A stretch of DNA of 64,000 nt from Octopus sinensis (Eukaryota). Each line of letters starts with the position of its first letter. The stretch's first letter is position 1. The stretch is taken from the NCBI RefSeq assembly GCF_006345805.1, contig NC_043013.1, positions 13,454,001 to 13,518,000 of the forward strand, given 5' to 3'. The position numbers were made by a program, and so were the translations under genes. The notes beneath the pieces are model-generated. The model ran no database searches. It was given only the letters and a program-made list of their open reading frames with translations, and was not told the DNA's origin. Below, in pieces: positions 3,075 through 61,475 of this stretch.

Positions 3075-3252
3075 CTATGGTTCTTGCTGCTTTGTATAAA
3101 CCACGCCCAACAGCTTCAGTATGTGGGTTCAACTGAATCTCTTTTCTTCCCCCAATCACAGAAATAAGCAAACTTGGTAAACGAATATTCCATGTAGATC
3201 TTACCAAACACATCATAATCTCCATAGGGGTTTGGTGATCCACACGAACAAA
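3075..3252 (-). CDS. TRPM: TRPM-like SLOG exon, copy A1 (FVRVDHQTPME...PSLLISVIGGRK...GLYKAARTI)
   Basis: tacatatAG|178 nt, open frame|GTataa, phase 0 to 1. Matches TRPM [YF]VRV...W.L..P.LLISV.GG...GL.KAA.T pattern. Confidence 0.92.
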
Positions 3253-3544
3253 CTATATGTAGAAAAAAGAAACATTGTATTAATGTAACCTAATGTTTAA
3301 TAAAATGGAAAAAATAATTCAGTTACTGATAATTTGGTGAATAAATTTATTGTTTAGAGTTATTGCTTGTATCCATAATATAGAGAATTAACAATAAATA
3401 TTTGAAAACTTAGAGGTTCCTCCTGTCACAGATGAAATCAAGAAAATTCAAGCAACAATTTCAATGAATATTATCCACAGATGTTATTGTAATAATTACT
3501 TATTATAATATGTTTAATATCTTATGTTAAATATCTTCTATACT

Positions 3545-3747
3545 CTTACTCATTTACTTGTTTTAGTCATTTGACTGCGGCCATGCTGAAGCACCGCCTT
3601 TAGTCGAGCAAATCGACCCCGGGACTTATTGTTTGTAAGCCCAGTACTTATTCTATCGGTCTCTTTTTGCCGAACCGCTAAGTGACGGGGACGTAAACAC
3701 ACCAGCATCGGTTGTCAAGCAATGCTAGGGGGACAAACACAGGCACA

Positions 3748-3795
<48 letters not shown>

Positions 3796-3969
3796 CATAT
3801 ATACGACAGGCTTCTTTCAGTTTCCGTCTACCAAATCCACTCACATGGCATTGGTTGGCCCGGGGCTATAGCAGAAGACACTTGCCCAAGGTGCCACGCA
3901 GTGGGACTGAACCCGGAACCAAGTGGTTGGTAAGCAAGCTACTTACCACACAGCCACTCCTACGCCTAT
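3545..3969 (-). mobile_element. tRNA-derived SINE family 1 with internal (CA)n(TA)n
   Basis: Head AGGAGTGGCTGTGTGGTAAG...GGTTCAGTCCC; body shared with 16990-17370 and 34297-34699. Confidence 0.9.
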
Positions 3970-4249
3970 ATTGCAACACTTTTGAATTTTTCTATCATAC
4001 ATAGAGTTTAGCCATAAATATAATATTTAGAATTAGTGATTTCTTTAAACAATTCTTTACAAGAAAATATTATGTTATCTCTCTCCTGTTTTGTAATACT
4101 TATTTCAATCATTCCGTCACAACAGAGTAAATTTCGAATATCAATGTCATATGCAGCTCAGAATTAGTATAATTCACTCCAGTTTAATATAATTCATAAC
4201 ATCACAAGAGTAAAATAAACTATTGCCCAAGTTGTACGCATGCAAGGGG

Positions 4250-4410
4250 GTGTGCATGCATGCGTATGTGTATGCACGCACATCAGTACATACACACACA
4301 TATTCATACACAGACACATAATTCATACATACATACATACATACATACATACATACATACATACATACATACATACATACATACAAACATACATACATAC
4401 ACACACACAT
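4250..4410. repeat. (TACA)n / (CA)n microsatellite
   Basis: Tetranucleotide run; source of spurious YIHT/VCMY ORFs. Confidence 0.95.
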
Positions 4411-4900
4411 TATGGCATCGAATACTAAAATCACAGCTTACATCGAGTTCAAGCAGAACTTCACGTCTTATATACATAAGGTACTGCAAGGGATAACAAT
4501 ACCGACAAGAGTTTGGAAAAGCACCACTGACATGATGTAATCTACGAGTGACGAATTTGTAAGAGAACAAGTAACTCAAATTCAAGCTCCTTGCTTTTGG
4601 ACAAAAAAATGTCGTCCTGCTATATATTGCCACAGTAACTTTGTTTCCACATATGGCTGATCCAAAGAGACTGATCCAAAGGATAATGATAATCCAAAAT
4701 GGATTAACTCACCGCACCCCAATAACATAATGGAGATAGAAAAAATAGAACAGTTGGATTTTATGATGAAATCCAAAGCTAAAAATGACTTCACAAATCA
4801 CTAGCTACAACAGCATGATAGATTCTCCAAATGGTATGAGAATTGTCATCGAGAAACACTCACAAGCCAACTGGTCACCCTCAAACACGATTTACGAGCA
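4410..4900 (+). mobile_element. Possible Penelope-like RT remnant
   Basis: Degraded INSPHPNNIMEIEKIEQLDF resembles the LN..HP.I.FT.E.E...L.FLD motif; stops and frameshifts present. Confidence 0.35.
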
Positions 4901-5699
4901 GTAAATGAACAACGCTGCTATTGTAAAAAATTGCACACAATTTTCCCGAAACCCACAAACTCTATATCGCAGTATGATCAGTGATATTATTGTAGTGGAC
5001 TTCATTTAGGCATAGAGTAGATTCGAACCTGAATCGACAAATTTCCTTTCACATTTCAACAGCACTTTTGTCATAAAGAGACATTAAGTTGACAGCAATA
5101 AAATGAACACATGGCTTTTGCTAAGTTGAATTATGTCTTTGCCACTTGACTCTTCTAACCTTTTGTATGCGATGGGGAGTTGAATTGAGATAACAGTCAA
5201 GCCCTCAAAGTATATCCATTGTCTTTGCAGCATAGCTATCTTTCTAACTAGTTTTGTATAGTTATAAATACTAGAATTTGCTAAGGAAATATCAGTTAGT
5301 GAACAGAGGCAACTAGAAATGGCCACCGGCAGACAGCCACTTGAGACAAATTGCTAGGGGAAGAAAGAAAACAATATGAGACATACAACTTCCCACTACT
5401 CTCTGACATTCACTAACTCAATTTTGTTTTCTACAACATTACCCTATCTCTATCCTTTTACTACTACATAATGACGAGATCACAAACACACCTATACAAG
5501 AAGAAATTAACCCTCTTAACTTTGCATGCTTTTCCACTTATATTATTACACACACCTGCCCGTCGAGGCATGGCATTATATTAAGTAACGGTAAATAAAA
5601 AAATTTGAAGCCAACATAACTTTAATCTCTGTTCTTCTTGCATCTTCTTTTATTTTGCACATCTACAACATCAATATCCGTTACAATCGTTAACTGCCA

Positions 5700-7150
5700 A
5701 CAATCAACATATATCATTACACAATTACTGTGACAATTGATGACCACTGACTTCGATTTCGCATACCGTTGCACTATCAAAGCAGCAAATTCTCTTCGCA
5801 CGGAAGACCTAGAGTCATTCTGGCGGGAAATCCGGTATATAAAGAAAGAACACAACCATGATGCAGCAGAGCTAAACGACATACGAAGGGAGTATTGTGT
5901 AAATGCCTCTCCCAAACATCTAACATCATCAGCGAAACACTCCTGATGGTTATTATGTAACTGCCGAAAGGAAAACCATCTGGGAGAGACCTGGTAACAT
6001 GCTACAGGTACAGAAATCTCACATTCTTCAGAGAAATTCTCATGGCCTTGCTGCAAAAAAGAACGAATGCAGAGCTAGATATACCAGATTGGCTAACGTT
6101 CGCACGTAATACGACTGCCCGCAAGAACGAAGAGTCCAATGTGACCAAAAACTATAGGCTTGAACTTTACGCAGGTTGCCTGAATAAATCTCCCCAGGAC
6201 CATTATCAAACAAATGGTGTGATAACTCACGAAGTGGCAGGGGGAAAGAAAGGAGTTTGCAGCTGTACTGGACAGGTCCTCTTTAACAAAGTTGCCCTGA
6301 AAGAAGTTAAGCAGCATCGTTGGAACATCTTAACAATATGGCTAGACTGCAAGAAGGTGTTTGAATCTGTGCTCACTCATGGATGACCACAACGTGGTCT
6401 ACACAGTTATCACTGACAACTATTAATGCAACACCTATTGGTACAAACAGGATTAAGCTATCAACAGGCGCATTCCAGGGCGATATTCTATCGGTAATTT
6501 TGTCTATATTGGCAGTGAACACTTTGTCGTTCCTGTTAACAAGATGCCAAAGCTACATGGCTGGACAGACGGAGAAAATAAGGCATTTTACCACAGTGCA
6601 GAAAGGAAATGAAGAATGGAGTCCTCCCACTAGTGTGTTAGGGTCCAACCGATAAAGAATAAAGTCTAACCATTGCTAGATTTTTGGGAATTGAATGAGC
6701 ACGTATAATGCTTTTAGGGCGGTGAAATTTTGCGGGACAGGGGCTGACAACAGGAACGACTACGATCGTCGATGTTAAGTCGGTATATCTACAGCTCTGA
6801 GAAATAGTGGTGTTACTATCTGGTGAGGTACAAGAACAGAATATATTTCCTGATCCGGCTGGCATTCGGTTTCAGTGCAGAACCAAAAATCATGGCGAAG
6901 GTTCTTAGGACGATCTTGATGACCAAGGTAGCACAGGCTACGAGTTCCTACACATATCGCATTCTGGATAGATTAGTATGTGCAGTTGGTAGAGTAAATT
7001 GTGGGTCATTTGAGGTGGTGTGAGTTGACCGCAAACCACCGAGGCTATAGGAGGCATTGCGCTGAGGCTCAAACACGAAAGAGGTAAGGTGGGCAGACCC
7101 GTATTTTAGAGAGGAAATGGGATTTGAGATCTGAGTGAGCACATGAGTAG
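5700..7150 (+). mobile_element. Degenerate R4/Dong-like LINE RT region
   Basis: SFWREI..EHNHDA, IPDWLT...KNYR, WLDCKKVFESV, GAFQGDILS.ILSILAVNTLSFLL across several frames. Confidence 0.7.
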
Positions 7151-7399
7151 GTTAGAACTGCTCTCAATATGCGGAAAACTGGTAGAGCACTATCCTATAA
7201 CAGGATGGCTCCAAAGGGCATGAAGCTGCATCAAGAGGCGATCTGAGGAAGTGAAGCAGAAAAAATGAGTTAGAAGAGAGGTGCCATGATGCAAGACGTC
7301 TTGGAGAGAGTGAAAACAGGGGATCCAGTGAAGGGCACCTCTTCGTCCCAATATTTTGTCATCTCTTTCGGATTCAAAATTCTGAAATCAGCTTTCACT

Positions 7400-8520
7400 A
7401 CTTAGTTCTACGTTATCTTTTCCACAAGAGCCAACCATTTACAATGATCAGCATGTCATTATACAGCTAGCCCCTTTCATAACCATCATATGGTCATATC
7501 AATATAGTCTTCACCCTCGAACGCATATGATTCCTCTTATGCCTAACTTTTCTCTTAAATACATTTATACTTTGTTGTTCATATACACAGATTTTTCACA
7601 TCCAATGGAGTATAGGTTTTCACATGTCCACTGCATTTAGAGCCCACATCTTATTACTATGTAGCACTGTTGTTTGTATATAGCCATCATACAATCAGTT
7701 TTTCATTCTGATAGGGAAGCATTTTGTTACCAACAGAGGCAAAAACTCTTGAAATTTCTCCAGCCTGTTTTTATTTTAGTAGCTATAACTTCAGAACAAC
7801 CGCTCCACTGATGGGTAATAGAAACTATCTTTTTTGTTTAGGGATCTTCCTGAGCATTTCAGAAAATCTATTTCCTATGCACATTTAGAATTTCTTTGCT
7901 AGTGTGCATCAACTGCATATGGAGTCTACTTTCTCTGTTAAACTGTCTGTGATACTATGGCAACTCGTGTGTTTCTATAGTTTGCACTAAGTATACCGCA
8001 TGGAATTTCTAATAGTATCTCTGTATAGGGTTTGTGTGGCTGTCATAAGCTATTCTTCTGCTGCTAGCTTCTTCTTTGACCTCACCTTTTCAGAGTAAGG
8101 AACTCTGTGAAACGTTTTCTGCAGATCAATGAATGCTCTGCAGTAACTTCCTCAAAACATGGATTTTTTAATACTTATCTATAGCACAGAACCGAACTTT
8201 ATCTCGTTTCGTCTTTTTCTGTAATTGCTTGAGCTGTAGTTGTTCCCATAACTTTCGTGTCCTTGTCCTGCAATTTGATACTCCTGTGATTACCTTTCTA
8301 TAGCATCTCCTTTATGCTTGTAACAATTGTTGTAATGCTGTAATGCCAGTCACTAGGTATACCACTTTCCTGTATAATCTGATTGACTATACAAGTAACT
8401 AAGCCATATCCCACAGTGCCAAGTATTTTAAACCTTATAATAGTAATTGCTAATGGGATTTCTCCTGCTTTAATATTCTTCAGGGCCCTATCTATCATAT
8501 TGCTACCAGCTAGAATGACT
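7400..8520 (-). mobile_element. Degenerate RTE-clade LINE RT fragment
   Basis: LKNIKAGE...VGYGLVTCIVNQIIQESGIPSDW, homologous to ORF 25605-26204. Confidence 0.7.
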
Positions 8521-8628
8521 AGTCATTCTGTTGGAAAGATCTTTCTTCCATGTTATCTCCACATATAGTAACCTTAAATGATAGCACTTTCAAGTTATTT
8601 TTTACCTCTCAGAATCACTTCTATCCAT

Positions 8629-8683
<55 letters not shown>

Positions 8684-8705
8684 CACACACACATACACAC
8701 ACACC
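8629..8705. repeat. (CA)n microsatellite
   Basis: Dinucleotide run. Confidence 0.97.
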
Positions 8706-8874
8706 AATATGAAAAATAACAGCCAACTATACAAAAAAAAAGAAACGATATGTAAAAATATTCACAAAAAGCATGTAAAATGTTGTTGCTATACAAATCC
8801 AAGGACAAAATATTCAGCTGATTATTGGATAATTTCTACAAACAACATCAATAAAAAGCAAGCAAAAAGAATAC

Positions 8875-8959
8875 CGTTGCATTTTCCTGATAATATCCCC
8901 AAAAATGTATTTCACCAAATGCATTACAGGGTTTTGATGGCTCCTCATCTTTAGAATTT
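8875..8959 (-). CDS. TRPM: TRPM-like exon, copy A1 (NSKDEEPSKPCNAFGEIHFWGYYQENAT)
   Basis: gtctttgatAG|85 nt|GTattc, phase 2 to 0. P-x-[DN]-A-F-G-E-I-x-F motif of MHR1; same length and acceptor as 45436-45520. Confidence 0.88.
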
Positions 8960-9479
8960 CTATCAAAGACAAACAGAAACCAAATGAACTGTTGAAGTAA
9001 AGTTGTAATGGGGAAGGTAGAAGAGGAAAAATGACAAAATCAAAAGATAAAGAACAACTCCAATGAATATTACCGACATAGATACATAAATCCATACACG
9101 GAAATAAATAAATAAATTTTAATTTAGTTGAATCAAATAATGATTACTTTTAAATAAACTGAAAAGGAAAAATAAGAAATATGTTGCCGTCAAAATAAAT
9201 TAAGAAAATGGGTTTCACCATTCCACATCTGAGGTATGATAAGACCATATTCAGAGAGAAAAAGATTACTCAACTGACTGGCACGAAGTCACTTACAAAT
9301 ACACACCAAATTCTGACCCATACTGTGCTGTGTCTTCTCTGCCTTTTCTACCGCTACTACAAATAGCCTCTGCTGGATGGTCTCTGACCACCTTATCCAG
9401 GTATCACTGATACACACATCAACACCCTATCTCAACAGGAACACCCTCTCTCCGTTCTCCTCTACTAGAAATCTCATAC

Positions 9480-10600
9480 CTACAACCAATTCCGCATTCC
9501 ATACCATCAATCGTCAAAATGACAGGACATAATACTGGCATTGTCATAAGACTGTCTCCTGCAGTATTCAAAATTTCTATTGGCTTACCCGAAAGAACGT
9601 AACACACAGTAACTGAAAGCTGAGCAACATTCTGGTGTTGGATCTACAGAAACAGGGAAATACTTGGCAGTTTTAAAATCTGCAACAATATAATTCTTGA
9701 TATGTTTTGCCATCAACAGAACAATTTCTTCGTAGATGGTAGGTGATAAGTACGACTGCTTACCACTTCCAGTATTGCCAAAGGTTTTCAAGTGACCCAT
9801 AAGAAATGGATCAAATTGTTCCATAATTCTCAGAAAATTTCTCAGTCAACTATCTCTTCACTACCTCTAAATGCCAGACCTCTCTCAACTAGAAATATTG
9901 TCACAGTCACTACATGAAAGAATGCAATACTTCAGTCCAGTATTTCTTGTTTCCCTGGACTTGTTCTTCCAATACCTTGTTAACATGAGATGATCCCTGC
10001 ATAAAAGATGGGGCTTGACTTTGTTCTTCTGTTTTCAGTTTCTCCTCTGCTTTTCTCATTTCAGTAAAGCCTTCCTTGTTGGAAAACCTGTCATGTTGAC
10101 CTTGCAGGAAAGTGCAGTAAAAACAATAAACCTTACCCTCTGATGAGCTGTACAGGGGTCACATCTTTAAAAAAACTGCTCACCATTGTCATGAATGGTA
10201 TAAAACATTAAATTTTTTAAACAACGATAGTGCCCAGCCAGTTTGCCTTCACTTGGTTTATAATGGTGTCGAGATACTGGGAAGGTGTCGGAGGCATTTT
10301 TATTTTAACATATGGATGATTTTGCCTGAAAGAACATGGACAAATACTTTTCTCTGACAGAAAATCATATGATTGTGTCTGGATCCCATGATGCTACTTT
10401 GCTATTCATGACAGTAGGACATGAGGATTCTTCACCTTGAATGTTTTGATGTAATACGTTCTTCCTCTTTTCTGCAGATCTACTTAGGAATGCAGCTGGT
10501 TCTTCAAAAGGAACGTCTGATACTGTTTCTACATTATTAGCCTCTAGGCTTTCTTTTTTCAAAGAAAATAACAATTCTACACAGTGTTGTGTCTTTTCTA
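9480..10600 (-). mobile_element. Degenerate hAT-superfamily (ZMYM1-like) transposase
   Basis: TTF-type zinc finger LYSSSEGKVYCFYC..F...GF..RKAEEKL (about 10030-10160) and DUF4371-like FDPFLMGHL...SYLSPTIYEEIV..MAK...AKYFPVSVDPTP (9585-9824). Confidence 0.78.
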
Positions 10601-11249
10601 ATACAGCAGCATGTTTTCATTTTGTTCTTTGTAAATTTTACTCGTCTGAGATCCAGTCAATTGAATTTTCTGTGGCATTCTTAGATATTTTGTGTGTGAG
10701 TATAATATATATTCTGAATAGAAGCAAAAGAAAATAATTTTAAAAAAATGAATAAATAATGTTGGAACTGATAGCAGCAATGTAGACATACTTCATTTAA
10801 TCCTGCTGCAGGTATATTAAGCCAGTCACTTTATGCATATGTGTTACTCCTATGTCTTTTGCAGATAAATAGAGCAGCTGCCAAAGTTAATAAAAATTGA
10901 ATAGAAAAATGTTCAAGGATTACAGATTAATGATTTCGTTTCCATAAAATTACTTTTCTTCAAAATTATGCTTCACTTCCATGAAAATGAAAAGGTGCCA
11001 GAATGACAGGTATAAGCCACTATCATCTCGGAAAGTTTTGCAAAAAGTGGAAATAGTATCGTAATCAACATTAGACGAATTATATTTCTTTTTAAAAACA
11101 AAACGAGAATAACATTAACAGCAAATTGTAGTACATCAAAAAAGTTAAAGACAGAAACATTTTTCGATATTCAGGTTAAATTTTTTTTGTAGATTCCCCA
11201 TTACTGTTGGATTTATTTTAATGAAACCACTGGCGGTGGAATATGAGCT

Positions 11250-11875
11250 ATGACAACAGATGACTTGCGAACACTTGAAAGAAACGAAGCTAGAATGCTC
11301 CGCTGGATGTCAGAGTGTATATGATTTAAGAGGAAAACTATATGATTTAAGAGGCATCAGATGTTGTGTGCAAGAGAAGAGACTGCGCTGGTTTGGTCAT
11401 GTGTTGCGTGTGGATGAGGACGGTTGCATAAAGAAGAGCTGATCCCTAATTGTGGAGAGAACTTGTGGATGGAATACATGGGGGAAGATGCGATGGGACG
11501 AAATGGTGAGAAAGTATCTTCAGACACTGGGCTACACTGAGGAAATATCAAGGGACCGGGAGCTGTGATGATCTGCTGTACTTGAAAAGACATACCACGC
11601 TAAGTAATATCCCGGTCATCCATATACACAGGCATGTGATTTACAGGTTCTAGTGCCATGTAAAATGAACCCGTGCCGGTGGCACGTAAAGTGCACCCAG
11701 CACACTCTGCAAAGTGGTTGGCGTTAGGAAGGGCATCCAGCCCTAGAAACCATGTAAAAACAGACAATTGGAGTCTGGAGAGCTTCTTGGATGGCCAGCT
11801 CCTGTCACACCGTCAAACCCATAGCAGCAAGGTGGATGGACGTTAAACAGTGATGATGATGATGATGATGATGAT

Positions 11876-11880
<5 letters not shown>
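11250..11880 (+). mobile_element. RTE LINE 3' fragment with (GAT)n tail
   Basis: IRCCVQEKRLRWFGHVLRVDED, then 3' UTR TGGTTGGCGTTAGGAAGGGCATCCAGC and (ATG)n(GAG)n. Confidence 0.85.
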
Positions 11881-11906
<26 letters not shown>

Positions 11907-14017
11907 AGGAGGAGGAGGATGTTTCTCTTACATGCCCCTACATCAAAATTAAATCTTCACAGCAACACATTTTCATTGCAAAAGATATCTTTCTCCAATA
12001 AAATGTCTTTTGCTTCAATGTTTGCCATCTTTTTCATTTCCAATTGGCTAAATACGCTGACTTTCTTTTAAATTTTCCATATATTTTCTTTCTATGATTT
12101 ACATTTGCTGCGGAACACAAAGACCAGGATTTCTCATATTTTGGATTTCATGTTTTAATTACTGCTTTCGCCCTAACATCTTGGGAAAGAGGGGAAACTG
12201 GCATTTATAGAATTTTTAAGTAACAATAAAGCTAGACATTTTGATTTTCATCTCAAACTTCCAAAATGCATGTTCGATTTAACCTTTTGAGACTTCTTCA
12301 TATTTAATATTATATAAGAAAACACTTCTAACAATATACGTTGTCGTGGTTATAACTCATCATCTATGATGAACTCATTTCAGTTTCTTCACATAAAATT
12401 AGATCAAGTCCCCAGCCAGAAAAGTAAAATTTCAAAATCTCTCTCTCTCTCTCTCTCTCTCGCTCTCTCCATAAATATAATTAGGATCATTATTAGCAGA
12501 TGCTGTGGATTTCCCACTGAGTTCACAAACCAGTTTTAACTTTTGCTTAATTCACTTTAATTTGTTCTTTATATAAAAGAGAAACAAATCGGCATCACAA
12601 AACCTAACCTCTTTCACTCATAAACATGTGTGTGATTGTTAAAATTATTTATGCCTTTGATGTATTAAGAGTAATGATTGAACAGAAATGATATACTGTT
12701 ATATCAAACACCAATTAGATTTAACTTTTGTTAGTCTTCTGTTGATCTCTATTTTTATGCTTTTCATAAATAATACCGGTGATCTAAGGGAGTAGGATTT
12801 GGAAATGTAACAATTTAATATATTCCCAAATTATTATGAGAAAACCCCTGAGATTTTATTTCTCTGCTTCTATCTCTTCACTTCTTTTCTTAAGTGCTAA
12901 GCGTTTAAGAAAAAAAAGAAAGAAAACGGAAATAAGAAAATCGACTGTATATAATTCCTAAATGTTTTAAAATGAACATAGTCCAACTGGCCTCATGATA
13001 CTAAGTTATGATGTATTGGGATGCTCAAAGAAAAGCGAAATAACGTTATTTCCAGCTACTAGGACACTTAAAAATGAGGTGGAAAATTGAATTATATAGA
13101 AATATTATTTTATGTTCTCTCCCTCGTAAGAAAAAATCTTGTAATAATAAAAAATATAAGCCCTGCGTGGTTCTTTCTCTTTAAAGGAAAACCTCACCCT
13201 CCCTTCTATTTCTAGGTAACTCACTTACTTTCTCTCTCTCTCTCTCTCTTACTCAAAATCATCTGTAGGTAGCAGCAACAACAGTTACCTGTCACATTTC
13301 CCACGTGTGATTCGAACGATGAATGCTACACACAAGACAAAAGGAAAGGTACCATGGCGAGATGAAACATATTGGAAATTAATTCTAAGTCATCCTCACG
13401 TGATAAGCAGCGTGGAAATACGACAAGAGATCCCACGTTTGCACCCGAGAGAAACACAGAGGGGTGTGCATGTAGTTTGTAAAGGAAATGGTAATCAAGT
13501 CTGTATGAAGAACAATCTAACAAGGCGAATAAGCACTGGAGGGGGAAAATTAACAAGAGAAATAAAACAATATCTTTGAAAAACTACTGGAATGAAATCC
13601 TAAACATGTAAGAGACTTTCCCTCATTCTATCACTGTCTCTCGCCTTCTGCATCTCTAATCCACTGTTAAAAGTAAAGAAAATAGAAAACCTTACTCTCT
13701 CCCTATTTCTTAGTAAACTTTCTTTCTCATCTTCTCTTATTCCGAAAGCAACTGTAGGTGGCAGCACCAACAGTCGCCAGTCAAATTTCACATAAGAAAA
13801 AATGACTTATATGGAAATCAACAATTAAGAGATTCTTTTAGTTACCTCTCCCGCCCATTGCTTTTGGATATCCACATCTCTAAGCGATGTTTTTGTATGC
13901 TAATTACTGGAAAAATCTCAACTGATAAAAATGCTTCAATTTACATTACCATAACTGAAATCCTAATATATGTGTACTTATACATTGTAAAATTTAGGGG
14001 CATATTTCTTGAATTAC

Positions 14018-14058
14018 CTTAGTTTTATGTTTTCCTCTATCCATTTCTTATCAGATTT
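14018..14058 (-). CDS. TRPM: TRPM-like exon, copy A1 (KSDKKWIEENIKLR)
   Basis: Minus strand ttttattttcAG|41 nt|GTaatt, phase 0 to 2. Encodes the W-I-x-E-N-I-K motif of the TRPM extreme N-terminus; homologous to 41682-41719. Family call only, no specific paralog. Confidence 0.8.
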
Positions 14059-14569
14059 CTGAAAATAAAAGAAAATAATATGAATGTTTGCAGGAATGAT
14101 GAGATTTCAGCATCTGACATTAATAACACAGAGTTTCAAATTCTATAACAAATTATACAGAGACGACATAACTGAACAGAAATACTATAATAAATAAGTA
14201 TAACTACAATTATCTGGAAGAGATAATCCAATCCATATTAACACAAGTACACATGAATTTGTTTTTTACTGATTTATAGTTTTTAGCATGGTACACTGGT
14301 TTTGACATGGGATTGGAATGAATCAAATCTTCCGGATAGAAACAGAGCCACATGATGATAAGAGAATTTTATTTCACCAATTTAAACATCTGTCAGGCTG
14401 AGAAAGTTATACAATACACCTAATGCATATTTAAAAAATAGAGACTAAAATGAAAGGAAGGAAAGAACAGATGCTAAAGATAAATGATCTTGTTGTTTAA
14501 TATATTTAATATTTTTGTAGCCTCCATCAATTGAAAGATCTATTCATTGGTGAAACCTTCAAGATAAAT

Positions 14570-16353
14570 TCCGCCGCCAACGTTGGTATCCTATTAAAAA
14601 CAAATTTCCAAAAGCACGCAGTAGTATGTTTTTATCGCACTCACAGTTGCTTATCGCACTCACAGTTGCACTGCCCTTCAGGATTGTTAGAGAAGTCGTA
14701 GGATGTGGTTGTGCTGTGCAAGTTTAAATACTGAAGTAAAAGGTAAATGATTTTCCTAGTCAAACACTTTTTAAACTTATAATAAATATTCATTGAGCAA
14801 GCTGTTGATATGCATATGAGGCATTTTATTATTTTTTATTTTTCTACTGAATGATATAAACACTTCTGCTAATGATAAACTTATGAACGAATTTTCTGTT
14901 TAGCTGCTTATTGTTTGTCGTCTTCTTTAAAATGCCTCGCACTTGTGTGAATAAGGCAGACAACTTCTGCAACATTTGTGGTGAGGTGACCTTTGCATCG
15001 CAGAGGTGCCGTATTACTGCTCTGGTTAGAAAGGTATATCACCTATGTTTTGGATGCAAGATTGGCGACCAGGATAAGAAGTGGGCTCCTCGCATGTGTT
15101 GCAACACTTGTGCTACTAGCCTTCACCAATGGTTGAACAGGAAAAGGAAAGGAATATCTTTTATTGTACGAATTACGTGGCGGGAGCCAACAGACAATAC
15201 AGGCAATTGTTATTTCTGCATGGTACTTCCAGTGAAAAAGGGCTTTTCAAAAAAGAGTCCCATGAATATCGAAATATTCCATTAGGTATGCGCCAGGTTC
15301 CACGTGGAAAATGTCTATCTGTTCCTGATGCACCAACTTCCATATTCTTCGAGTCAGATGAAGAAGGGGGTGAAGAGGAAGCAGAAGGGGATAACAGTGC
15401 TGGATTGCAGAATGACCAAAATTTTGATGAAACACACTCCTCTAGATCACAACGGGATTCCATGGCCTTGACAAGGATCTATGACTACCTGAGAATAGGG
15501 CAGAGCTGCTAGGCTCTCGTCTTCAACAGTGAAATCTCCGAATAGCTGATGTAAACTTTCAAAATTTCATGACCGTCAGCAACAGTTCAGCAATTTTTTC
15601 ATAATGGAAGGTGATTTATTGGCCTGCAAAAATATTAATGGTCTGATGGAAGCACTTGATATTAAATACGAACCCAGTCACTGGAGGCTGTTCATAGATT
15701 CATGAAAAATTTGCCTGAAAGCTCTCTTGTTGCATAATAGCAATAGTGAACCTTCAGTTCATGTGGTCTATGAATCATATATGAAAAAAAAAAACATAAG
15801 AGAATATAAAGCTTATGCTGCAATGCATAAAATATAGTGAACATCAATGGCAGCTCTGTGATGACTTAAAGGTTGTTGCTTTTGTGATGGGCTCTCAGGA
15901 CGGATACACCAAGTTCTGTTACTTTCTGTGTGAATGGGATAGCTGCGCAAGAGGTTCGCACTGTATCAGGAGAGACTGGTCACCTCGTCAAACGTTGAAA
16001 CTTGGGATGAAAAATGTTCAACTTCCACCTCTCACTGAGCCAAGCAAAATTTTTCTCCCATCACTACACATAAAAGTGTGGCTCATGAAAAAATTTGTAA
16101 AAGCTATGGACAAATCTGGTCAATGATTCAAGTATTTAACATCAGAATTCTCACCCCCACTGAGCAATGCTATGATAAAAGAGGGAGTCTTCATTGGTCC
16201 TCAGAGCTGAGAGCTTCTTAAAGAATTAATGGAAAACCTCGCCAAGGCTTACAAGAATATGGGATGTAACATGTCATGTTAAATCCACGTTTGGAGACAC
16301 ATTTAGACGTTTTTCTAGCGGGCTGTGGGGCAGTTAGTGACGAACATCGTTGA
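14570..16353 (+). mobile_element. Degenerate DNA transposase, superfamily uncertain (possibly Sola-type)
   Basis: Cys-rich N-terminus FCNICGE...GCKIGDQDKKWAP..CCNTC...WREP....CYFC; core DDLKVVAFVMG.Q.GYTKFC.FLCEWDS...LHIK..LMKKFVKAMD and GAVSDEH. Many stops; truncated by the N gap. Confidence 0.72.
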
Positions 16354-16453
16354 NNNNNNNNNNNNNNNNNNNNNNNNNNNNNNNNNNNNNNNNNNNNNNN
16401 NNNNNNNNNNNNNNNNNNNNNNNNNNNNNNNNNNNNNNNNNNNNNNNNNNNNN
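16354..16453. other. Assembly gap (exactly 100 N)
   Basis: Run of 100 N; a transposase remnant runs into its left edge and unrelated sequence follows. Confidence 0.99.
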
Positions 16454-16700
16454 TAACGGGGGGTAGCATTCTCAAAGTTATAATGAAGGGGAGTAAGAGA
16501 GGGAAAGGAGGAAATAGTGTGAGTGAGGAAGATGGCCCCTAGCAACCACACCTTTTAAGCTAGGGATTTCTAAGGTAGCCCACGAGCATCGTTACCTCAT
16601 TCTACATGTCCCTGTAAATTTTGGAGCGAATTGGACGGGATGTAGTGGCATTGAAAGCGATCCAAGCGGTAAAAACGCATTTCAGTTTTATATATAGAGA
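16454..16700 (+). mobile_element. Possible non-autonomous Helitron/Helentron-type 3' end
   Basis: AAATTTTGGAGCGAATTGG...CATTTCAGTTTTATATATAGAGAT terminus resembles invertebrate DINE-like ends (from memory). Confidence 0.3.
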
Positions 16701-16828
16701 TATATAAATAGGTGAATGAATTATCCTATGTTTATCGTCAGCATGGAAAATTCGTTGAACCGATACCTGGGTAGCATATGTCGAGAGTAAAGGAATTTTT
16801 TAACATCTTCGTTCGACTCCATTCTTTC

Positions 16829-16868
<40 letters not shown>

Positions 16869-16952
16869 TATTAGAAAGACACACATGTTAATATATATAT
16901 ATATATATACATATATTAGATGGACACACATGTTATTATAATATATATATTA

Positions 16953-16989
<37 letters not shown>

Positions 16990-16991
<2 letters not shown>

Positions 16992-17370
16992 GGAGTGGCT
17001 GTGTGGTAAGTAGCTTGCTAACCAACCACATGGTTCCGGGTTCAGTCCCATGCGTGCATCGGGCAGTGTCTTCTGCTATAGGTCCCCCGGGCCTGAACAA
17101 TGCCTTGTGAGTGGATTTGGTAGACGGAAACTGAAAGAAGCCTGTCGTAGATATATATGTAAGTGTGTGTGTGTTTGTGTGTCTGTGTTGTCCCCCTAGC
17201 ATTGCTTGACAACCGATGCTGGTGTGTTTACGTACCCGTCACTTAGCGGTTCGGCACAAAAGACCGATAGAATAAGGACTGGGCTTACAAAAGAATAAGT
17301 TGCTCGATTAAAGGCGGTGCTCAAGCATGGCCGCAGTCAAATGACTGAAACAAGTAAAAGAGTAAAAGAG
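16990..17370 (+). mobile_element. tRNA-derived SINE family 1
   Basis: Same head and body as 3545-3969 in opposite orientation. Confidence 0.9.
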
Positions 17371-17394
17371 TATATATATATATATATATATACG

Positions 17395-17575
17395 TGCGGG
17401 TGGCACGTACAAAGCACCCACTACACTCACGGAGTGGTTGGCGTTAGGAAGGGCATCCAGCCGTAGAAACACTGCCAGATTTTGACTGGGCCTGATGAAG
17501 CCTTCTGGCTTCACAGACTCCAGTAGAACCGTCCAACCCATGCTAGCATGGAAAACGGACGCTAAACGATGATGA
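17395..17575 (+). mobile_element. RTE 3'-UTR-derived short element with (GAT)n tail
   Basis: GTGGCACGTA.AAAGCACC...GGAGTGGTTGGCGTTAGGAAGGGCATCC...GGACGCTAAACGATGATGAT. Confidence 0.8.
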
Positions 17576-17642
17576 TATATATATACATACACACACATAT
17601 ATATATATATATGCATATATATATATATATATATATAATATT

Positions 17643-17834
17643 AATTAGAGACAAAACCACTATTATGCAAATCAAACAAAGAAAGACTTAATCCAATACA
17701 TAAAAATTTTTATATAAATTAAATATAATTAATTATTCTTAATTATATTTAATATATTTAATTTATATAAATTTTTTATGTATTGGATTAAGTCTTTCTT
17801 TGTTGATTTGCATAATAGTGGTTTGTCTCTAATT
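17643..17834. repeat. Long near-perfect inverted repeat (about 190 bp palindrome)
   Basis: AATTAGAGACAAAACCACTATTATGCAAATCAAACAAAGAAAGACTTAATCCAATACATAAAAA mirrored by its reverse complement. Confidence 0.93.
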
Positions 17835-17924
17835 ATATTATATAATATTTTACTATAAAATTGGATTCAATCCTAAATCTGATTTTTCCCTGTAAATTTG
17901 GATTATTCCCTAATATTATTATTA

Positions 17925-17954
17925 TATATATATATATATATACATACACACACA

Positions 17955-18036
<82 letters not shown>

Positions 18037-18075
18037 CATACACACACAAACATATATATATATATATATATACAT

Positions 18076-18120
<45 letters not shown>

Positions 18121-18125
18121 TATAT

Positions 18126-18177
<52 letters not shown>

Positions 18178-18262
18178 CATACACATATATATATATATAC
18201 ATAACATATATATATATATATATATACACACATACACCACACTATATATATATACATATATA
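17925..18262. repeat. Compound (TA)n/(CA)n microsatellite
   Basis: Low-complexity run producing spurious YI/HT ORFs. Confidence 0.96.
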
Positions 18263-19029
18263 AAGATGGATGGAACTTGAGGAGGAGGAAGACCTATAAA
18301 TATGTGGGAAAAAGTATGTAAAATGACCTTCAGATTGTGAGTTTCACAGAGGATATGACAAAGAACTGGGATAATTGATCATTTGGGCTTCAGGAGATCT
18401 GTCTATCTACGTAAAATCGATGTCCTAAAGGCATGTTGTCTATTTCTATACCCCTGCACACAATCCATGTCTCTGAATCTCTCCCCCCAAAACATATCTT
18501 CCTATCCCTATTTACTGCATTTTTCTCCCCTCCATCTCCTACTCACCTTTCATAAACTTACCTACCCACTCACCCTATCCAATCCTCTGTACCGATTACT
18601 ATATATACACCTCCCTGTAATTTGATGGAATGCCCCAATACATCTTCTTCGCCCTCTTCTCTCTCCCTCTGGTTCCACCTGGAGTAGCCATGTATCGCTT
18701 CTACTGCAACATATCTGTTTCTCTCCCCTTATTCATACTCTAACTTCTCATCAGCTGGCACAAAGTCACCTCCCTCACTACTACTCCCCCCACTCAGTTG
18801 CAGTTTCTTGTTTTGCAAGTTACTTGGTCACCTCTCTAGTGTTGGTGCCACATAAAAAGCACCCAGTAAACTCTGTAAAGTGGTTGGTGTTAAGAAGAAC
18901 ATCTGGCTGTAGAAACCATGCCAAAGCAAATGGTAGAGTCTGGTATGGTCTTCTGGCTTACCAGTTCTTCTCAAACCATCCAACCCGTACCACAATGGAA
19001 GAAGGACATTAAATAATGTTGGTATAGAC

Positions 19030-19064
<35 letters not shown>

Positions 19065-19074
19065 GATGATGATG

Positions 19075-19125
<51 letters not shown>

Positions 19126-19544
19126 TTCTCTTCATCATCATGGTATTGATTTATGTTTTCTAAAACCTGAACTTATGCTAAACTTTATATTCTAGTCAAG
19201 TCATACTTTATACATTTTAGACCTAAATGAGGTTATACTTAATGTGAGATGTATTTTAGAATCAGTTATATTTTATTATTAAGATATAATTAAAAAGATA
19301 TACATTTTACTTTAATCATTTATATATTTTTACCTCAATCAGGTATGTTTTGTACTTTAACCAGGTATGCATTACACCATGATCTGGTTATACCTTCTAC
19401 TTTAACCAGGTATATTTAAAAATTTAATCATGTATATGTTTTATACACTAACTAGATATGTTTTACCTTAATCAGGCATATTTCATAATTTAATTATATA
19501 TATATTTTTTCTTAATCAATTCATATTTTCTGCTGTAATTTTAG

Positions 19545-19654
19545 AGAGAGAAGTCAAGATTCCAGTTGTTGTAGTAATGGTTGGAGGTGGACCTGGAACT
19601 CTGAAGTCAGTGTATGATTCAATATCACGCAACATCCCAGTTGTAATAGTAAAG
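19545..19654 (+). CDS. TRPM: TRPM-like exon, group A2 (REVKIPVVVVMVGGGPGTLKSVYDSISRNIPVVIVK)
   Basis: tttAG|110 nt|GTcagt, phase 1 to 0. Canonical PVV...GGPGT...PVV MHR2 motif. Exact acceptor ambiguous because of the AGAGAG run. Confidence 0.92.
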
Positions 19655-27909: not shown

Positions 27910-27998
27910 GATTCTGGTCGAGCAGCAGATATTATGGCAGATGCTTACCAAACAAAACTCGAAAATTCAAATGAAGAAGATGAAGACAAAAATGACAG
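27910..27998 (+). CDS. TRPM: TRPM-like exon, group A2 (DSGRAADIMADAYQTKLENSNEEDEDKND)
   Basis: ttatcAG|89 nt|GTttgt, phase 0 to 2. SGRAAD motif; in frame with the preceding exon. Confidence 0.92.
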
Positions 27999-29301: not shown

Positions 29302-29486
29302 GAAACTGAAAACTGATATCAGAGAGCAAATTATTAAAGAATTTGAAAAGGAATTGAAAGGAAAAGGGATAGATAACTTGGTTGACTATGTGTTGATGTC
29401 CCTAAAACGACCAAACTTGCTGACTGTTTATGATAAAGATTCAGAGAAAGAATTTGATCTAACAATGTTCAAAGCTGTATTCAAGG
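29302..29486 (+). CDS. TRPM: TRPM-like exon, group A2 (KLKTDIREQ...PNLLTVYDKDSEKEFDLTMFKAVFK)
   Basis: ttctaAG|185 nt open|GTaaga, phase 2 to 1. LLTVY...DL...KA..K motif that follows SGRAAD in TRPMs. Confidence 0.88.
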
Positions 29487-34280: not shown

Positions 34281-34296
34281 CATTAACTATTTTGAT

Positions 34297-34699: not shown

Positions 34700-35379
34700 A
34701 AGAACATTTTAATATCAACACACTGTTTCATGTAAAATCTATATTACAGCAAAGAACAACATAGAAAATATGAGGCTCGGATTGGCATGGAACAAACCTG
34801 ATGTTCTAAAACGTCTAATATCTGAAAGAGAAGCTCCCTGGGAAGTAAGATAATATCTTTTTTTATCACTTCATGTTGTGAACAATTATTAATTTAACAT
34901 TTTTTTTCTTCTTGAGAGGATGAAGAGTAAAATGTTTTCAATACAAATGTATTTTAAATATCGTTTTAATAATTTGAATGCTTGTAAAATAATTATTGCT
35001 TGTTTGTTAAATTTTTTCACTGGAGATAGTCGAAGGATCACTTTAGGCAGGAATAGCAAGTGGGAAATTTATGAACCTTGTGTATGTGTGTGTGCATACT
35101 TATTTGTCAGAATGTGTATGATGCTGCTGTGTACATCCATGTGCGTTTATCTCTGTCTGTCTGTCTGTCTCTCCCTATAAAAAAAAACAAAAAAAAAATA
35201 AAACTTAGATATGTTTCGACCAAAGATTGGTCCAGGCCATGTCTAACTTAATAGCACCACCTGATAGGATTATTCGAATCCTGTTTAAGTCAAGTTTTGT
35301 TCAAGTAGTGAGTTCTTGTTGGGTGAGTTGTATCTAGTTTTGTTCAAGTAGTGAGTTCTTGTTGGGTGAGTTGTATCCA

Positions 35380-41681: not shown

Positions 41682-41719
41682 GATGTAAAGAAATGGATTC
41701 AGGAAAACATAAAATTGAG
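41682..41719 (+). CDS. TRPM: TRPM-like exon, copy B (DVKKWIQENIKLR)
   Basis: ttttattttcAG|38 nt|GTaatt, phase 0 to 2; paralog of 14018-14058. Confidence 0.8.
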
Positions 41720-45435: not shown

Positions 45436-45520
45436 AAACCTTAGAGACGAAGAGGCATCAAATCCCTGTGATGCATTTGGTGAGGTAAAGTTTGTAGAAC
45501 ATGATCAGAAAATTGCAAAG
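45436..45520 (+). CDS. TRPM: TRPM-like exon, copy B (NLRDEEASNPCDAFGEVKFVEHDQKIAK)
   Basis: gtctttgatAG|85 nt|GTaatt, phase 2 to 0; DAFGEVKF motif. Confidence 0.9.
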
Positions 45521-48059: not shown

Positions 48060-48098
<39 letters not shown>

Positions 48099-52113: not shown

Positions 52114-52293
52114 TTTGTTCGTGTGGATCACCAAACCCCCATGGATATTATAATTAATTTGATAATATATCATTGGAATTTCTCATGCCAAACTTACTTA
52201 TTTCTGTGATTGGGGGAAGAGAAGACGTCCAGTTGAATGAACCTACTAAAGAAGCTCTTGGGCACAGTTTAGTTAAAGCTGCAAGAACAACAG
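52114..52293 (+). CDS. TRPM: TRPM-like SLOG exon, copy B, with 1-nt frameshift near 52180 (FVRVDHQTPMDII...|PNLLISVIGGRE...LVKAARTT)
   Basis: tacatatAG|180 nt|GTaaaa. 181 nt would be needed for phase 0 to 1; only 8 nt lie between TGGAAT and CCA versus 9 in copy A1. Confidence 0.82.
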
Positions 52294-61311: not shown

Positions 61312-61475
61312 ATGCCTGGATCATAAGTGAAGGTTTACATAGTGGAGTTGTGAAATATATTGGGGAAGCTATATCTGATAATGAAAATAAAGTGGCTGAC
61401 ATGAAAAAAGTGAAAACCATTGGTATTGCACGGTGGAACTGTGTACAAAACAAAGAATCCCTAGTGAATAAGGAG
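61312..61475 (+). CDS. TRPM: TRPM-like SLOG exon, copy B (DAWIISEGLHSGVVKYIGEA...KTIGIARWNCVQNKESLVNKE)
   Basis: ttgttttgcAG|164 nt|GTaaat, phase 1 to 0. AWII..G...GV.K..GEA and IGIA.W motifs. Confidence 0.93.

What the first reader, a model, noticed from the sequence alone, without database searches (positions are those of the whole stretch)
3075..19654. Early TRPM exons are on the minus strand and later exons on the plus strand, with the switch spanning the 100-N gap
Seen: A1 (KWIEEN, NAFGE, FVRVD exons) reads leftward and A2 (GGGPGT onward) reads rightward. All six exons have intact GT-AG sites and open frames, and the only gap lies between them. Reversing the contig left of 16354 gives the normal TRPM order, with the missing AWII and following exons predicted left of this window. 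Inference: most likely a mis-oriented contig; otherwise a real intragenic inversion or a head-to-head paralog.
Basis: partly seen in the sequence, partly recalled or inferred. Interest (0 to 1): 0.72.

Follow-up and report, generated by a model that had tools for sequence, protein, structure and literature searches.

The report
Two octopus SLOG-repeat gene copies meet
The strand switch is not one broken TRPM channel gene: it is where parts of two copies of an octopus gene made of repeated TRPM "SLOG" modules sit back to back at a scaffold gap, probably because of an assembly join.

Summary
Three minus-strand exons (14058-14018, 8959-8875, 3252-3075) and three plus-strand exons (19545-19654, 27910-27998, 29302-29486) have AG/GT sites and open frames, and the only gap lies between them.

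They are not halves of a normal TRPM gene. The window is Octopus sinensis CM016875.1. The exons belong to a channel-less family whose proteins carry four tandem TRPM SLOG (MHR1/2) units.

A1 matches residues 144-244 of RefSeq LOC115221043 exactly. That minus-strand model continues left with its own AWII, GGGPGT and later exons, and its N-terminal exons lie upstream on the same strand.

A2 is the 3' half of unit 2 of a second copy. This is RefSeq XP_029647073.

This plus-strand copy is cut off at the gap. Its unit 4 sits on unplaced scaffold VCDQ01003106.1. Its O. vulgaris ortholog (CAI9735597 plus CAI9735598) is inferred to be uninterrupted.

My best reading is a boundary between paralogs at a scaffold join, with the plus-strand block probably misplaced. 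A real young rearrangement or a flipped left contig cannot be excluded. Interest is low. The undescribed 4xSLOG family is the notable by-product.

The parts
14018..14058 (-). A1e1: first exon of SLOG unit 1 of LOC115221043 (KSDKKWIEENIKL). It is an internal exon with an AG acceptor; its upstream exon is not in the window.
   Evidence: exact match to P0133 residues 144-156
8875..8959 (-). A1e2 (NSKDEEPSKPCNAFGEIHFWGYYQENAT)
   Evidence: 100% to P0133
3075..3252 (-). A1e3 (FVRVDHQ...LLISVIGG...AARTI), the start of the SLOG fold
   Evidence: 100% to P0133 and to O. vulgaris CAI9735615
16354..16453 (.). 100-N scaffold gap. It lies in non-coding DNA, and the flanks are not continuous.
16990..19544 (+). 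Intron upstream of A2e1. It is collinear with, and paralogous to (78-81%), the intron upstream of the same exon type in unit 4 of O. vulgaris and of the unplaced O. sinensis scaffold. The copy is therefore cut by the contig end, not by a visible breakpoint.
19545..19654 (+). A2e1: exon 6 of SLOG unit 2 of the second copy (REVKIPVVVVMVGGGPGT...IPVVIVK). It uses the family's conserved acceptor TTGTAATTTTAG.
27910..27998 (+). A2e2 (DSGRAADIMADAYQTKLENSNEEDEDKND)
29302..29486 (+). A2e3 (RKLKTDIREQ...LLTVYDKDSEKEFDLTMFKAVFK)
34750..34844 (+). A2e4: last exon of unit 2 (AKNNIENMRLGLAWNKPDVLKRLISEREAPWE).
41682..41719 (+). A3e1: first exon of unit 3 (DVKKWIQENIKL), spliced in frame from A2e4
45436..45520 (+). 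A3e2 (NLRDEEASNPCDAFGEVKFVEHDQKIAK)
52114..52293 (+). A3e3 (FVRVDHQTPMDII...LLISVIGG...). It lacks 1 nt near 52183 relative to O. vulgaris, which gives the premature stop that ends RefSeq XP_029647073.
61312..61475 (+). A3e4 (DAWIISEGLHSGVVKYIG...). Not part of XP_029647073 or LOC115221043, the only two gene calls listed here, and 164/164 nt identical to O. vulgaris.

Best explanation
The window is Octopus sinensis chromosome CM016875.1, about 13,454,001-13,518,000. It holds pieces of two paralogous copies of a channel-less gene family. The proteins of this family are four tandem copies of the TRPM N-terminal SLOG (MHR1/2) module, each encoded by about nine exons.

A1 is exons 1-3 of unit 1 of LOC115221043, on the minus strand. 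That model has its N-terminal exons about 148 kb upstream on the same strand. It continues left of the window through its own units 1-4.

A2 is exons 6-9 of unit 2 of a second copy, on the plus strand. It splices directly, in frame, into unit 3 (A3) inside the window. This is RefSeq XP_029647073.

The strand switch is therefore the boundary between two different gene copies, not an inversion inside one gene. I put this part at about 0.85.

The second copy starts in mid-unit at the contig end. Its unit 4 lies on an unplaced scaffold. Its O. vulgaris ortholog is inferred to be one uninterrupted same-strand array. So the placement and orientation of the plus-strand block, antisense inside the 5' intron of LOC115221043, is most likely a Hi-C scaffolding error in a segmentally duplicated cluster. 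I put this part at about 0.55-0.6; it is inferred, not shown.
For: Species and locus: P0118 (XP_029647073.1) equals the spliced A2-A3 chain exactly, and L001 is window 9577-62209.

A1's gene: the A1 chain equals P0133 (LOC115221043) residues 144-244. It is followed by DAWIITEGLH... and by three more SLOG units. The P0133 gene spans 320 kb on the minus strand. XP_029647073 is nested in it antisense. The first exon lies about 98 kb right of the window's end, and A1e1 to the 3' end spans 172 kb, about 5.7 kb per intron.

Repeat architecture: there are four LSDAT_euk hits and no ion-transport domain in P0133 and in the O. bimaculoides homolog P0134. The unit-to-unit splice from A2e4 to A3e1 is phase-compatible.

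No pore or MHR3/4 exons occur in the window.

Orthology: window 47285-64000 aligns collinearly with O. vulgaris OX597830.1 at 96.5% identity, or 98.4% counting substitutions only. Exons A3e3 and A3e4 are 344/344 identical apart from one missing T, so they are under selection.

O. vulgaris arrangement: CAI9735597 (N-terminus, unit 1, unit 2 ending in A2-like exons) and CAI9735598 (A3e4 to unit 4) have consecutive accession numbers. Their neighbour lists place them collinear on one strand.

Fragmentation: the unplaced O. sinensis scaffold VCDQ01003106.1 aligns at 95-98.5% to the unit-4 part of that O. vulgaris locus.

Assembly quality: O. sinensis has 20,491 contigs with only 86% of bases placed. 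O. vulgaris has 2,758 contigs, is manually curated and has 99% placed. The two species are largely collinear and split about 2.5 Mya (PMC10700109).
Against: No reads, Hi-C data or AGP file could be examined, and no DNA outside the window from CM016875.1.

The strand and adjacency of CAI9735597 relative to CAI9735598 are inferred from accession order and neighbour lists, not from coordinates.

Exon-level orthology among copies is a mosaic. LOC115221043 matches CAI9735615 in its N-terminus and A1, and CAI9735597 in residues 391-720. Gene conversion or chimeric gene models could therefore mislead the comparison.

A second O. vulgaris model (CAI9735606) is about as close to the A3 exons as the chosen ortholog.

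Very long gene ranges occur in this family (602 kb in O. bimaculoides), so a 148-kb intron is not abnormal in itself.

The right end of the plus-strand contig was not seen.
Confidence: 0.55

Rival explanations
1. The arrangement is real. In O. sinensis a partial copy (unit 2 3' half onward) was inverted or inserted antisense into the long 5' intron of LOC115221043 within the last ~2.5 My. The gap and the unplaced unit 4 are only assembly incompleteness.
For: RefSeq builds a full-length, four-unit model (P0133) through the present layout. That model is collinear with the O. bimaculoides protein. The cluster holds copies in both orientations: LOC115221041 and LOC115221043 are convergent, 8.4 kb apart. 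Long introns are normal for the family.
Against: The break falls exactly at a contig end. The intron upstream of A2e1 is intact up to about 0.5 kb from the gap. The copy's exons are still under purifying selection, with 0 substitutions in 344 nt against 1.6% in the introns. That is unexpected for a promoter-less, 5'-truncated fragment. The sister species appears to keep the copy whole.
Confidence: 0.25
2. The contig left of the gap is mis-oriented. Flipped, it gives A1 -> rest of unit 1 -> 5' half of unit 2 -> gap -> A2 -> A3, one collinear gene like O. vulgaris CAI9735597 plus CAI9735598. The further A2-like and A3-like exons in the LOC115221043 model would then belong to another copy.
For: Residues 391-720 of P0133 (unit 1 e7 to unit 2 e5, left of the window) are 100% identical, in every 30-residue window compared, to CAI9735597. 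The 3' exons of CAI9735597 are A2-like, close to the window's A2e1-e3 (33/36, 28/29, 55/62 where it skips five residues) although CAI9735658 and CAI9735615 are closer for A2e3, and it sits just upstream of the DNA-level ortholog of A3. P0133's own A2-like exons have no O. vulgaris match of 97% or more. Short contigs are easily flipped by Hi-C scaffolders (general knowledge).
Against: The N-terminal exons and A1 of LOC115221043 are on the same strand and in the right order. Together they match one O. vulgaris model, CAI9735615, at 100% for the N-terminal windows 31-60 and 91-150 and for A1e1 and A1e3; windows 1-30 and 61-90 and A1e2 match less well. A1e3 is only 55/59 identical to CAI9735597. 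The flip needs a further, unseen gap exactly after unit 2 e5. It would also leave the N-terminal exons and the remaining minus-strand exons orphaned.
Confidence: 0.15
3. Both contigs are correctly placed and oriented, and the gap hides more than 100 kb. That hidden stretch would hold the 5' halves of two complete genes transcribed away from each other.
For: Both exon chains lack their upstream exons on the gap side. The length of the gap is only a placeholder.
Against: In O. vulgaris the gene upstream of the ortholog is a C2-domain gene about 6 kb away, not a divergent SLOG gene. RefSeq finds the N-terminal exons of A1's gene elsewhere, 148 kb upstream.
Confidence: 0.05

Closest known systems
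N-terminal MHR1/2 (SLOG, Pfam LSDAT_euk PF18139) of TRPM2-like channels, e.g. Nematostella TRPM2-like (PDB 6co7) and the octopus 'TRPM-like 2' channels
   Same: The sequence family and motifs are the same (KWIxENI, LLISVxGG, AWIxxxGxHxG, HSHFILVD, GGGPGT, xSGRAAD, LxxWNx), in the same order. An O. sinensis channel model (P0138) is 88% identical to A1e3.
   Different: There are no MHR3/4, TRPM2-type domain (PF25508), six-TM pore (PF00520), TRP helix or C-terminal domains. The SLOG module is repeated four times in tandem, and the protein ends inside unit 4.
RefSeq/ENA models of the same family: O. sinensis LOC115221043 (XP_036366249) and LOC115221041 (XP_036366207); O. bimaculoides LOC106871768; O. 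vulgaris CAI9735597, 598, 606, 615, 658 and 241
   Same: The window's exons are these genes or their close paralogs. A1 is exact in LOC115221043, and A2-A3 is exact in XP_029647073.
   Different: The window's plus-strand copy is only a fragment. It is annotated as a 221-residue 'TRPM member-like 2' that ends at a 1-nt frameshift.
Pore-less short TRPM products (TRPM2-S, the short melastatin/TRPM1 isoform). From my own knowledge, not tested here.
   Same: These are N-terminal-only TRPM-derived proteins without a channel. They are reported to bind and damp the full-length channel.
   Different: Those are splice isoforms of channel genes with one MHR region. Here there are separate genes with four SLOG modules.
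Hi-C scaffolding mis-joins or mis-orientations of short contigs in segmental duplications
   Same: There is a fixed 100-N join, an inferred break of collinearity with the sister species at the join, the continuation of the copy on an unplaced scaffold, and many similar paralogs nearby.
   Different: This is not verified with reads or contact maps, and a real rearrangement gives the same picture in the sequence.

Membership tests
TRPM cation channel gene | N-terminal MHR1/2 (SLOG, LSDAT_euk) region | tested here: met
   Pfam PF18139 at 2.3e-10 (A1) and 8.9e-6 (A2e1). PDB TRPM2/3/7 hits down to 9e-14.
TRPM cation channel gene | MHR3/4 region following MHR1/2 (Pfam PF25508 TRPM2-type domain) | tested here: not met
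   After the LAWNKPD exon the gene restarts a new SLOG unit. P0133, P0134 and P0118 have no PF25508 hit. Octopus channel proteins hit the window only with their SLOG part.
TRPM cation channel gene | Six-TM pore domain (PF00520) and TRP helix | tested here: not met
   No LIAxF or WKFQR-type motifs occur in any frame. No tblastn hit to TM regions of eleven TRPM channel proteins (nine from Octopus). No PF00520 in the gene products.
Octopus channel-less 4xSLOG family (LOC115221043 / LOC106871768 type) | Four tandem LSDAT_euk modules in one product and no other domain | tested here: met
   P0133 and P0134 each have 4 stretches of PF18139. The same architecture appears in P0002, P0131, P0135, P0136 and P0001.
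Octopus channel-less 4xSLOG family (LOC115221043 / LOC106871768 type) | The last exon of one unit splices in frame to the first exon of the next unit | tested here: met
   A2e4 (donor GTAAGA after 34844, phase 0) joins A3e1 (acceptor before 41682). The junction ...APWE|DVKKWIQ... is present in XP_029647073 and, with small substitutions, in P0001, P0002, P0131 and P0133.
   A1's gene model has its own downstream exons (1,280 residues over 172 kb) and upstream N-terminal exons on the minus strand. Caveat: models can be chimeric.
   No read or contact data are available.
Scaffolding misplacement of the plus-strand block | The block is bounded by contig ends, and collinearity with the sister species breaks at those ends | tested here: inconclusive
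   The left end is the gap. The right end is inferred because unit 4 is on unplaced VCDQ01003106.1. In O. vulgaris the ortholog is preceded by its own 5' half. The O. vulgaris DNA upstream of L002 could not be fetched.

The most novel reading that the evidence does not exclude
The exons belong to an octopus-lineage family that I did not find described in the searchable literature. Its members are soluble proteins built of four tandem TRPM-type SLOG (MHR1/2) modules. The family is multi-copy and is kept by purifying selection. It could act as a multivalent ADP-ribose/nucleotide binder, or as a decoy or partner of the neighbouring TRPM-like channels. On the same reading, the antisense partial copy in O. 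sinensis could be a real rearrangement less than 2.5 My old that broke one member.
Probability: 0.25. Interest if true: 0.55.

Novelty: already known. Interest (0 to 1): 0.22.

Why it matters
For the finding itself, it mostly corrects a reading. There is no inversion inside a TRPM channel gene, and both exon sets are already annotated as separate RefSeq genes on opposite strands.

It flags a probably mis-scaffolded stretch of CM016875.1, about 13.29-13.62 Mb. It also flags a truncated RefSeq protein (XP_029647073) that probably results from a 1-nt assembly error plus a contig end.

The by-product may interest TRP-channel and cephalopod biologists. Octopus species carry clustered genes encoding four tandem SLOG modules without any channel. 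In TRPM2 this module is the ADP-ribose-binding part. The genes are conserved from O. bimaculoides to O. vulgaris and O. sinensis, and I found no paper describing them.

Tried and rejected
1. A word-index homolog search with the spliced A1 peptide found nothing. The library is indexed by cluster representatives, so this result says nothing.

2. I searched the window for pore, TRP-helix, HSHFILVD and N-terminal exons by motif and by tblastn, and found none.

3. I tested continuity across the gap with the transposon ORF that abuts it. Its continuation is not on the right flank, so the test cannot confirm adjacency.

4. I tried to fetch O. vulgaris or O. sinensis DNA beyond the window through gene look-ups. 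All the multi-SLOG genes span 185-687 kb and come back without DNA. Only L002 and L003 were obtained.

5. I tried to assign orthology exon by exon from protein identity. The result is a mosaic across copies, so it does not decide which contig is wrong.

6. I looked in O. vulgaris L002 for minus-strand N-terminal exons downstream of the ortholog and found none.

7. I rejected 'A3 is a decayed pseudogene'. Apart from one missing T, its exons are identical to O. vulgaris while the introns differ.

Full report
**What is in the sequence**

The window is AT-rich, transposon-rich animal DNA with one 100-N run at 16354-16453.
- On the minus strand: 14058-14018, 8959-8875 and 3252-3075.
- On the plus strand: 19545-19654, 27910-27998 and 29302-29486.
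- All have polypyrimidine-AG acceptors, GT donors and compatible phases.
- The spliced A1 peptide hits TRPM2/3/7 structures (best: Nematostella TRPM2-like 6co7, E=9e-14) and Pfam LSDAT_euk, 'SLOG in TRPM'.

**The gap**

No reading frame crosses the gap. The nearest exons are 2.3 kb to the left and 3.1 kb to the right. They lie on opposite strands and both read away from the gap.
- Both A1e1 and A2e1 begin at internal acceptors. Their upstream exons are nowhere in the window on either strand.
- The flanks share no sequence.
- The left flank ends inside a decayed transposon ORF (...AVSDEH|NNN) whose continuation is not on the right flank. The right flank is unique DNA followed by (TA)n.
- Sequence is therefore missing, and adjacency cannot be shown from the letters.

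A self-comparison shows that 2984-14393 matches 41354-52390 in inverted orientation at 70-76% identity, introns included.
- There is thus a second, plus-strand set of KWI.EN / .AFGE / FVRVD exons at 41682-41719, 45436-45520 and 52114-52293, followed by an AWII exon at 61312-61475.
- A further exon at 34750-34844 (AKNNIENMRLGLAWNKPD...) follows A2e3.
- Its donor (phase 0) fits the acceptor of the 41682 exon.
- On the plus strand, 19545 to 61475 is therefore one continuous, phase-compatible chain of eight exons. After the LLTVYD and LAWN exons it does not go on to MHR3/4 and a pore. It starts a new SLOG unit.
- No pore, TRP-helix or MHR3/4 exons occur in the window. Nine octopus TRPM-like channel proteins and two further TRPM2-type proteins (Priapulus, Branchiostoma) hit it only with their SLOG part.

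**Identity of the genes**

An exhaustive profile search with A1e3 found proteins with three matched stretches each. Further searches named them.
- The window is Octopus sinensis GCA_006345805.1, chromosome CM016875.1. L001 is window 9577-62209, which is record 13,463,577-13,516,209.
- The plus-strand chain from the Met in MVGGGPGT to a stop in exon 52114-52293 is exactly RefSeq XP_029647073.1, 221 aa.
- The A1 chain is exactly residues 144-244 of XP_036366249.1 (LOC115221043, 1,423 aa).
- That protein, its neighbour LOC115221041 (1,272 aa), O. bimaculoides LOC106871768 (1,419-1,474 aa) and several O. vulgaris models (CAI9735597, 598, 606, 615, 658, 241) consist of tandem LSDAT_euk modules and nothing else. 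The full-length models have four modules.
- Each unit has about nine exons: KWIxENIKL, xAFGx, FVRVD..LLISVIGG, AWIIxxGLH, ..HSHFILVD.., ..GGGPGT..IPVVIVK, xSGRAAD.., ..LLTVYD.., ..LxWNx...
- The natural C-terminus lies inside unit 4, where the ..IPVV.VK exon is read through into VSK*.
- I found no paper describing these channel-less multi-SLOG genes. A 2026 survey of TRPM evolution that includes octopus does not mention them in the passages retrieved.

**What A1 and A2 are**

A1 is exons 1-3 of unit 1 of LOC115221043.
- In that model A1e3 is followed by DAWIITEGLHTG... and then by complete units 2, 3 and part of 4.
- These include the gene's own exon-6 to exon-9 set of unit 2 and its own unit 3. 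They differ from the window's A2 and A3 (29/36, 27/29, 57/62, 27/32 and 50/55 identical residues).
- The LOC115221043 gene spans 320,155 bp. Converting coordinates through the nested XP_029647073 gene (window w = 172,396 - c) gives three figures. The first exon lies at window-scale 162.4 kb, which is 98 kb right of the window on the minus strand. A1e1 lies 148 kb downstream of it. The remaining 31 exons occupy 172 kb to the left, about 5.7 kb per intron, the same as inside the window.
- LOC115221041 lies further left, convergent, with 8.4 kb between the 3' ends.
A1's orientation also agrees with its own N-terminal exons.

A2 is exons 6-9 of unit 2 of another copy. That copy continues into unit 3 within the window.

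**Is the layout real?**

Several results suggest an assembly problem.
1. The plus-strand copy begins in mid-unit 3.1 kb after the gap. The intron upstream of A2e1 (16990-19544) is still collinear with the homologous intron of unit 4 in O. vulgaris and in an O. sinensis scaffold. The family's exon-6 acceptor is conserved. The copy is thus cut by the contig end, not by a visible breakpoint.
2. Window 47285-64000 aligns collinearly to O. vulgaris OX597830.1:67.48 Mb (L002) at 96.5% identity. That is 98.4% counting substitutions, plus about one indel per 180 bp. This is the level expected for orthologs that split about 2.5 Mya (PMC10700109).
3. Within that stretch, exons A3e3 and A3e4 are 344/344 identical apart from one missing T, where about 5.6 substitutions would be expected. 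The copy is under purifying selection, which a promoter-less 5'-truncated fragment should not be.
4. In O. vulgaris the gene just before the ortholog (CAI9735597, then CAI9735598) carries an N-terminus, unit 1 and unit 2, and ends in A2-like exons. It reads through the same exon-9 donor (..WEVR*). Consecutive accession numbers and the neighbour lists place the two models on one strand in order: a C2-domain gene lies upstream of 597 on the opposite strand, and nothing lies between 597 and 598. There, the array appears uninterrupted. This step is an inference.
5. The O. sinensis counterpart of unit 4 of this copy is on the unplaced 52.5-kb scaffold VCDQ01003106.1, which matches L002 48.6-85.9 kb at 95-98.5%. 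The chromosomal contig carrying A2-A3 is therefore probably shorter than about 70 kb.
6. The O. sinensis assembly has 20,491 contigs and only 86% of bases placed. O. vulgaris has 2,758 contigs, was manually curated and has 99% placed. The two genomes are reported as largely collinear with few inversions (PMC10700109).

**Which piece is wrong?**

This cannot be settled here. Two points favour the plus-strand block as the odd one out.
- The N-terminal exons and A1 of LOC115221043 are on the same strand and in the right order.
- The windows 31-60 and 91-150 of the N-terminal part, A1e1 and A1e3 are 100% identical to one O. vulgaris model, CAI9735615. Windows 1-30 and 61-90 (26/30, 16/30) and A1e2 (20/28) are not.

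- Residues 391-720 of LOC115221043 (unit 1 e7 to unit 2 e5, left of the window) are 100% identical, in every 30-residue window compared, to CAI9735597. That is the model which runs on into the A2-like exons and the A3 ortholog.
- LOC115221043's own A2-like exons have no O. vulgaris match of 97% or more.

Relative to the O. vulgaris models, LOC115221043 is therefore a mosaic (615-type 5' end, 597-type middle). Three causes are possible: a patchwork of contigs from different copies, chimeric gene models, or gene conversion. Exon-level identities of the window's A2 and A3 against the various O. vulgaris copies are likewise mixed. Long gene ranges are normal for this family: 602 kb in O. bimaculoides with no nested gene.

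My estimates for the layout are:

| Reading | Probability |
|---|---|
| Scaffolding misplacement of the plus-strand block | ~0.55 |
| Real young rearrangement | ~0.25 |
| Flipped left contig | ~0.15 |
| Large hidden gap | ~0.05 |

**How the thing works**

The strand switch has no mechanism of its own. It is the meeting point of two gene copies.

For the genes, the following is shown:
- four SLOG modules and no channel;
- conservation across three Octopus species;
- purifying selection on exons;
- clustering of copies in both orientations on the same chromosome as TRPM-like channel genes.

The function is inferred. In TRPM2 the MHR1/2 SLOG region forms an ADP-ribose site (cited in PMC13143021). 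Pore-less N-terminal TRPM isoforms are reported to modulate full-length channels (my own knowledge). A soluble four-module protein would therefore most plausibly be a multivalent nucleotide/ADP-ribose binder, or a partner or decoy of TRPM-like channels. Nothing here tests that.

**Verdict**

There is no intragenic inversion of a TRPM channel gene. Both exon sets are already separate RefSeq genes. The finding is ordinary: a paralog boundary at a doubtful scaffold join. The by-products are a probably erroneous frameshift and truncation in XP_029647073, and an uncharacterised 4xSLOG gene family.

Noticed in passing
window 52183 (exon 52114-52293): One T is missing (TCA-TGCC against TCATTGCC in O. 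vulgaris) in an exon that is otherwise 180/180 identical. It creates the stop that ends RefSeq XP_029647073 (..NFSCQTYLFL*). The two assemblies differ by about one indel per 180 bp here, so this is probably an assembly indel rather than a pseudogene lesion.
   Followed up: yes
L003 (O. sinensis unplaced scaffold VCDQ01003106.1) against L002 48566-85855: The unit-4 part of the same gene copy sits on an unplaced 52.5-kb scaffold, annotated separately as 'TRPM member 4-like' (XP_036355031). One gene is thus spread over at least two scaffolds.
   Followed up: yes
window 61312-61475: The AWIISEGLHSG exon has intact splice sites and is 164/164 nt identical to O. vulgaris. It belongs to neither of the two gene calls listed for this stretch of O. 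sinensis.
   Followed up: partly
window 57239-57586 (+): This ORF is used as the first coding exon of O. vulgaris CAI9735598 (116 aa). In O. sinensis it has an in-frame stop (..EQEH*AVNS..) and diverges at about the neutral rate, so it is probably a spurious exon in the O. vulgaris model.
   Followed up: partly
window 10253-10330 (-): This intronic stretch between A1e1 and A1e2 matches (88%) a 26-residue 'exon' (QNQPYVKIKLPPTPSQYLDTIINQ) that O. vulgaris model CAI9735606 uses instead of the AFGE exon. It is likely a mis-called exon in a paralog.
   Followed up: no
window 8875-8959 (-), A1e2: Six of 28 residues (NAFGEIHFWGYY against DAFGKIKFTGHN) differ from the other unit-1 copies of three species (at least 6 of 28 differ from each), although the neighbouring exon A1e3 is 100% conserved with O. 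vulgaris. This is a dense patch of substitutions with no explanation.
   Followed up: no
LOC115221043 (P0133) against O. vulgaris models: The O. sinensis 1,423-aa model is a mosaic relative to O. vulgaris. Most of the N-terminal part, A1e1 and A1e3 match CAI9735615 at 100%. Residues 391-720 match CAI9735597 at 100%. The rest matches nothing at 97% or more. The cause could be chimeric scaffolding, chimeric models or gene conversion.
   Followed up: partly
window 19655-19666, and the C-termini of P0131, P0134 and P0010: The family's natural stop comes from reading through the donor of the ..IPVVIVK exon (GTCAGTAAATAG = VSK*). The same sequence follows the internal exon A2e1, so each unit carries a latent terminator.
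   Followed up: no
window 21.4-27.0 kb (+), 35544-36278 (-), 33726-34205 (+), 54882-55301 (+), 63282-63833 (+): The introns are full of transposon remains. There are two LINE-type reverse-transcriptase copies inside the A2e1-A2e2 intron (21660-22473 is about 71% identical to 25159-25955), further RT fragments, and a fragment that by eye resembles a Helitron/PIF1-type helicase (not searched).
   Followed up: no
window 3494-3962, 16990-17375, 34257-34699, 48096-48273, 30266-30362: A repeat family of about 400 bp (80-86% identical, in both orientations), probably a SINE. One copy lies 0.5 kb right of the gap.
   Followed up: no
O. sinensis P0250 (TRPM-like 2 isoform X1) and O. vulgaris P0137: Channel gene models in the same cluster look stretched or composite. 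P0250 spans 687 kb with three unrelated genes nested inside. P0137 carries two SLOG units before its pore. Annotation of the whole cluster seems unreliable.
   Followed up: no
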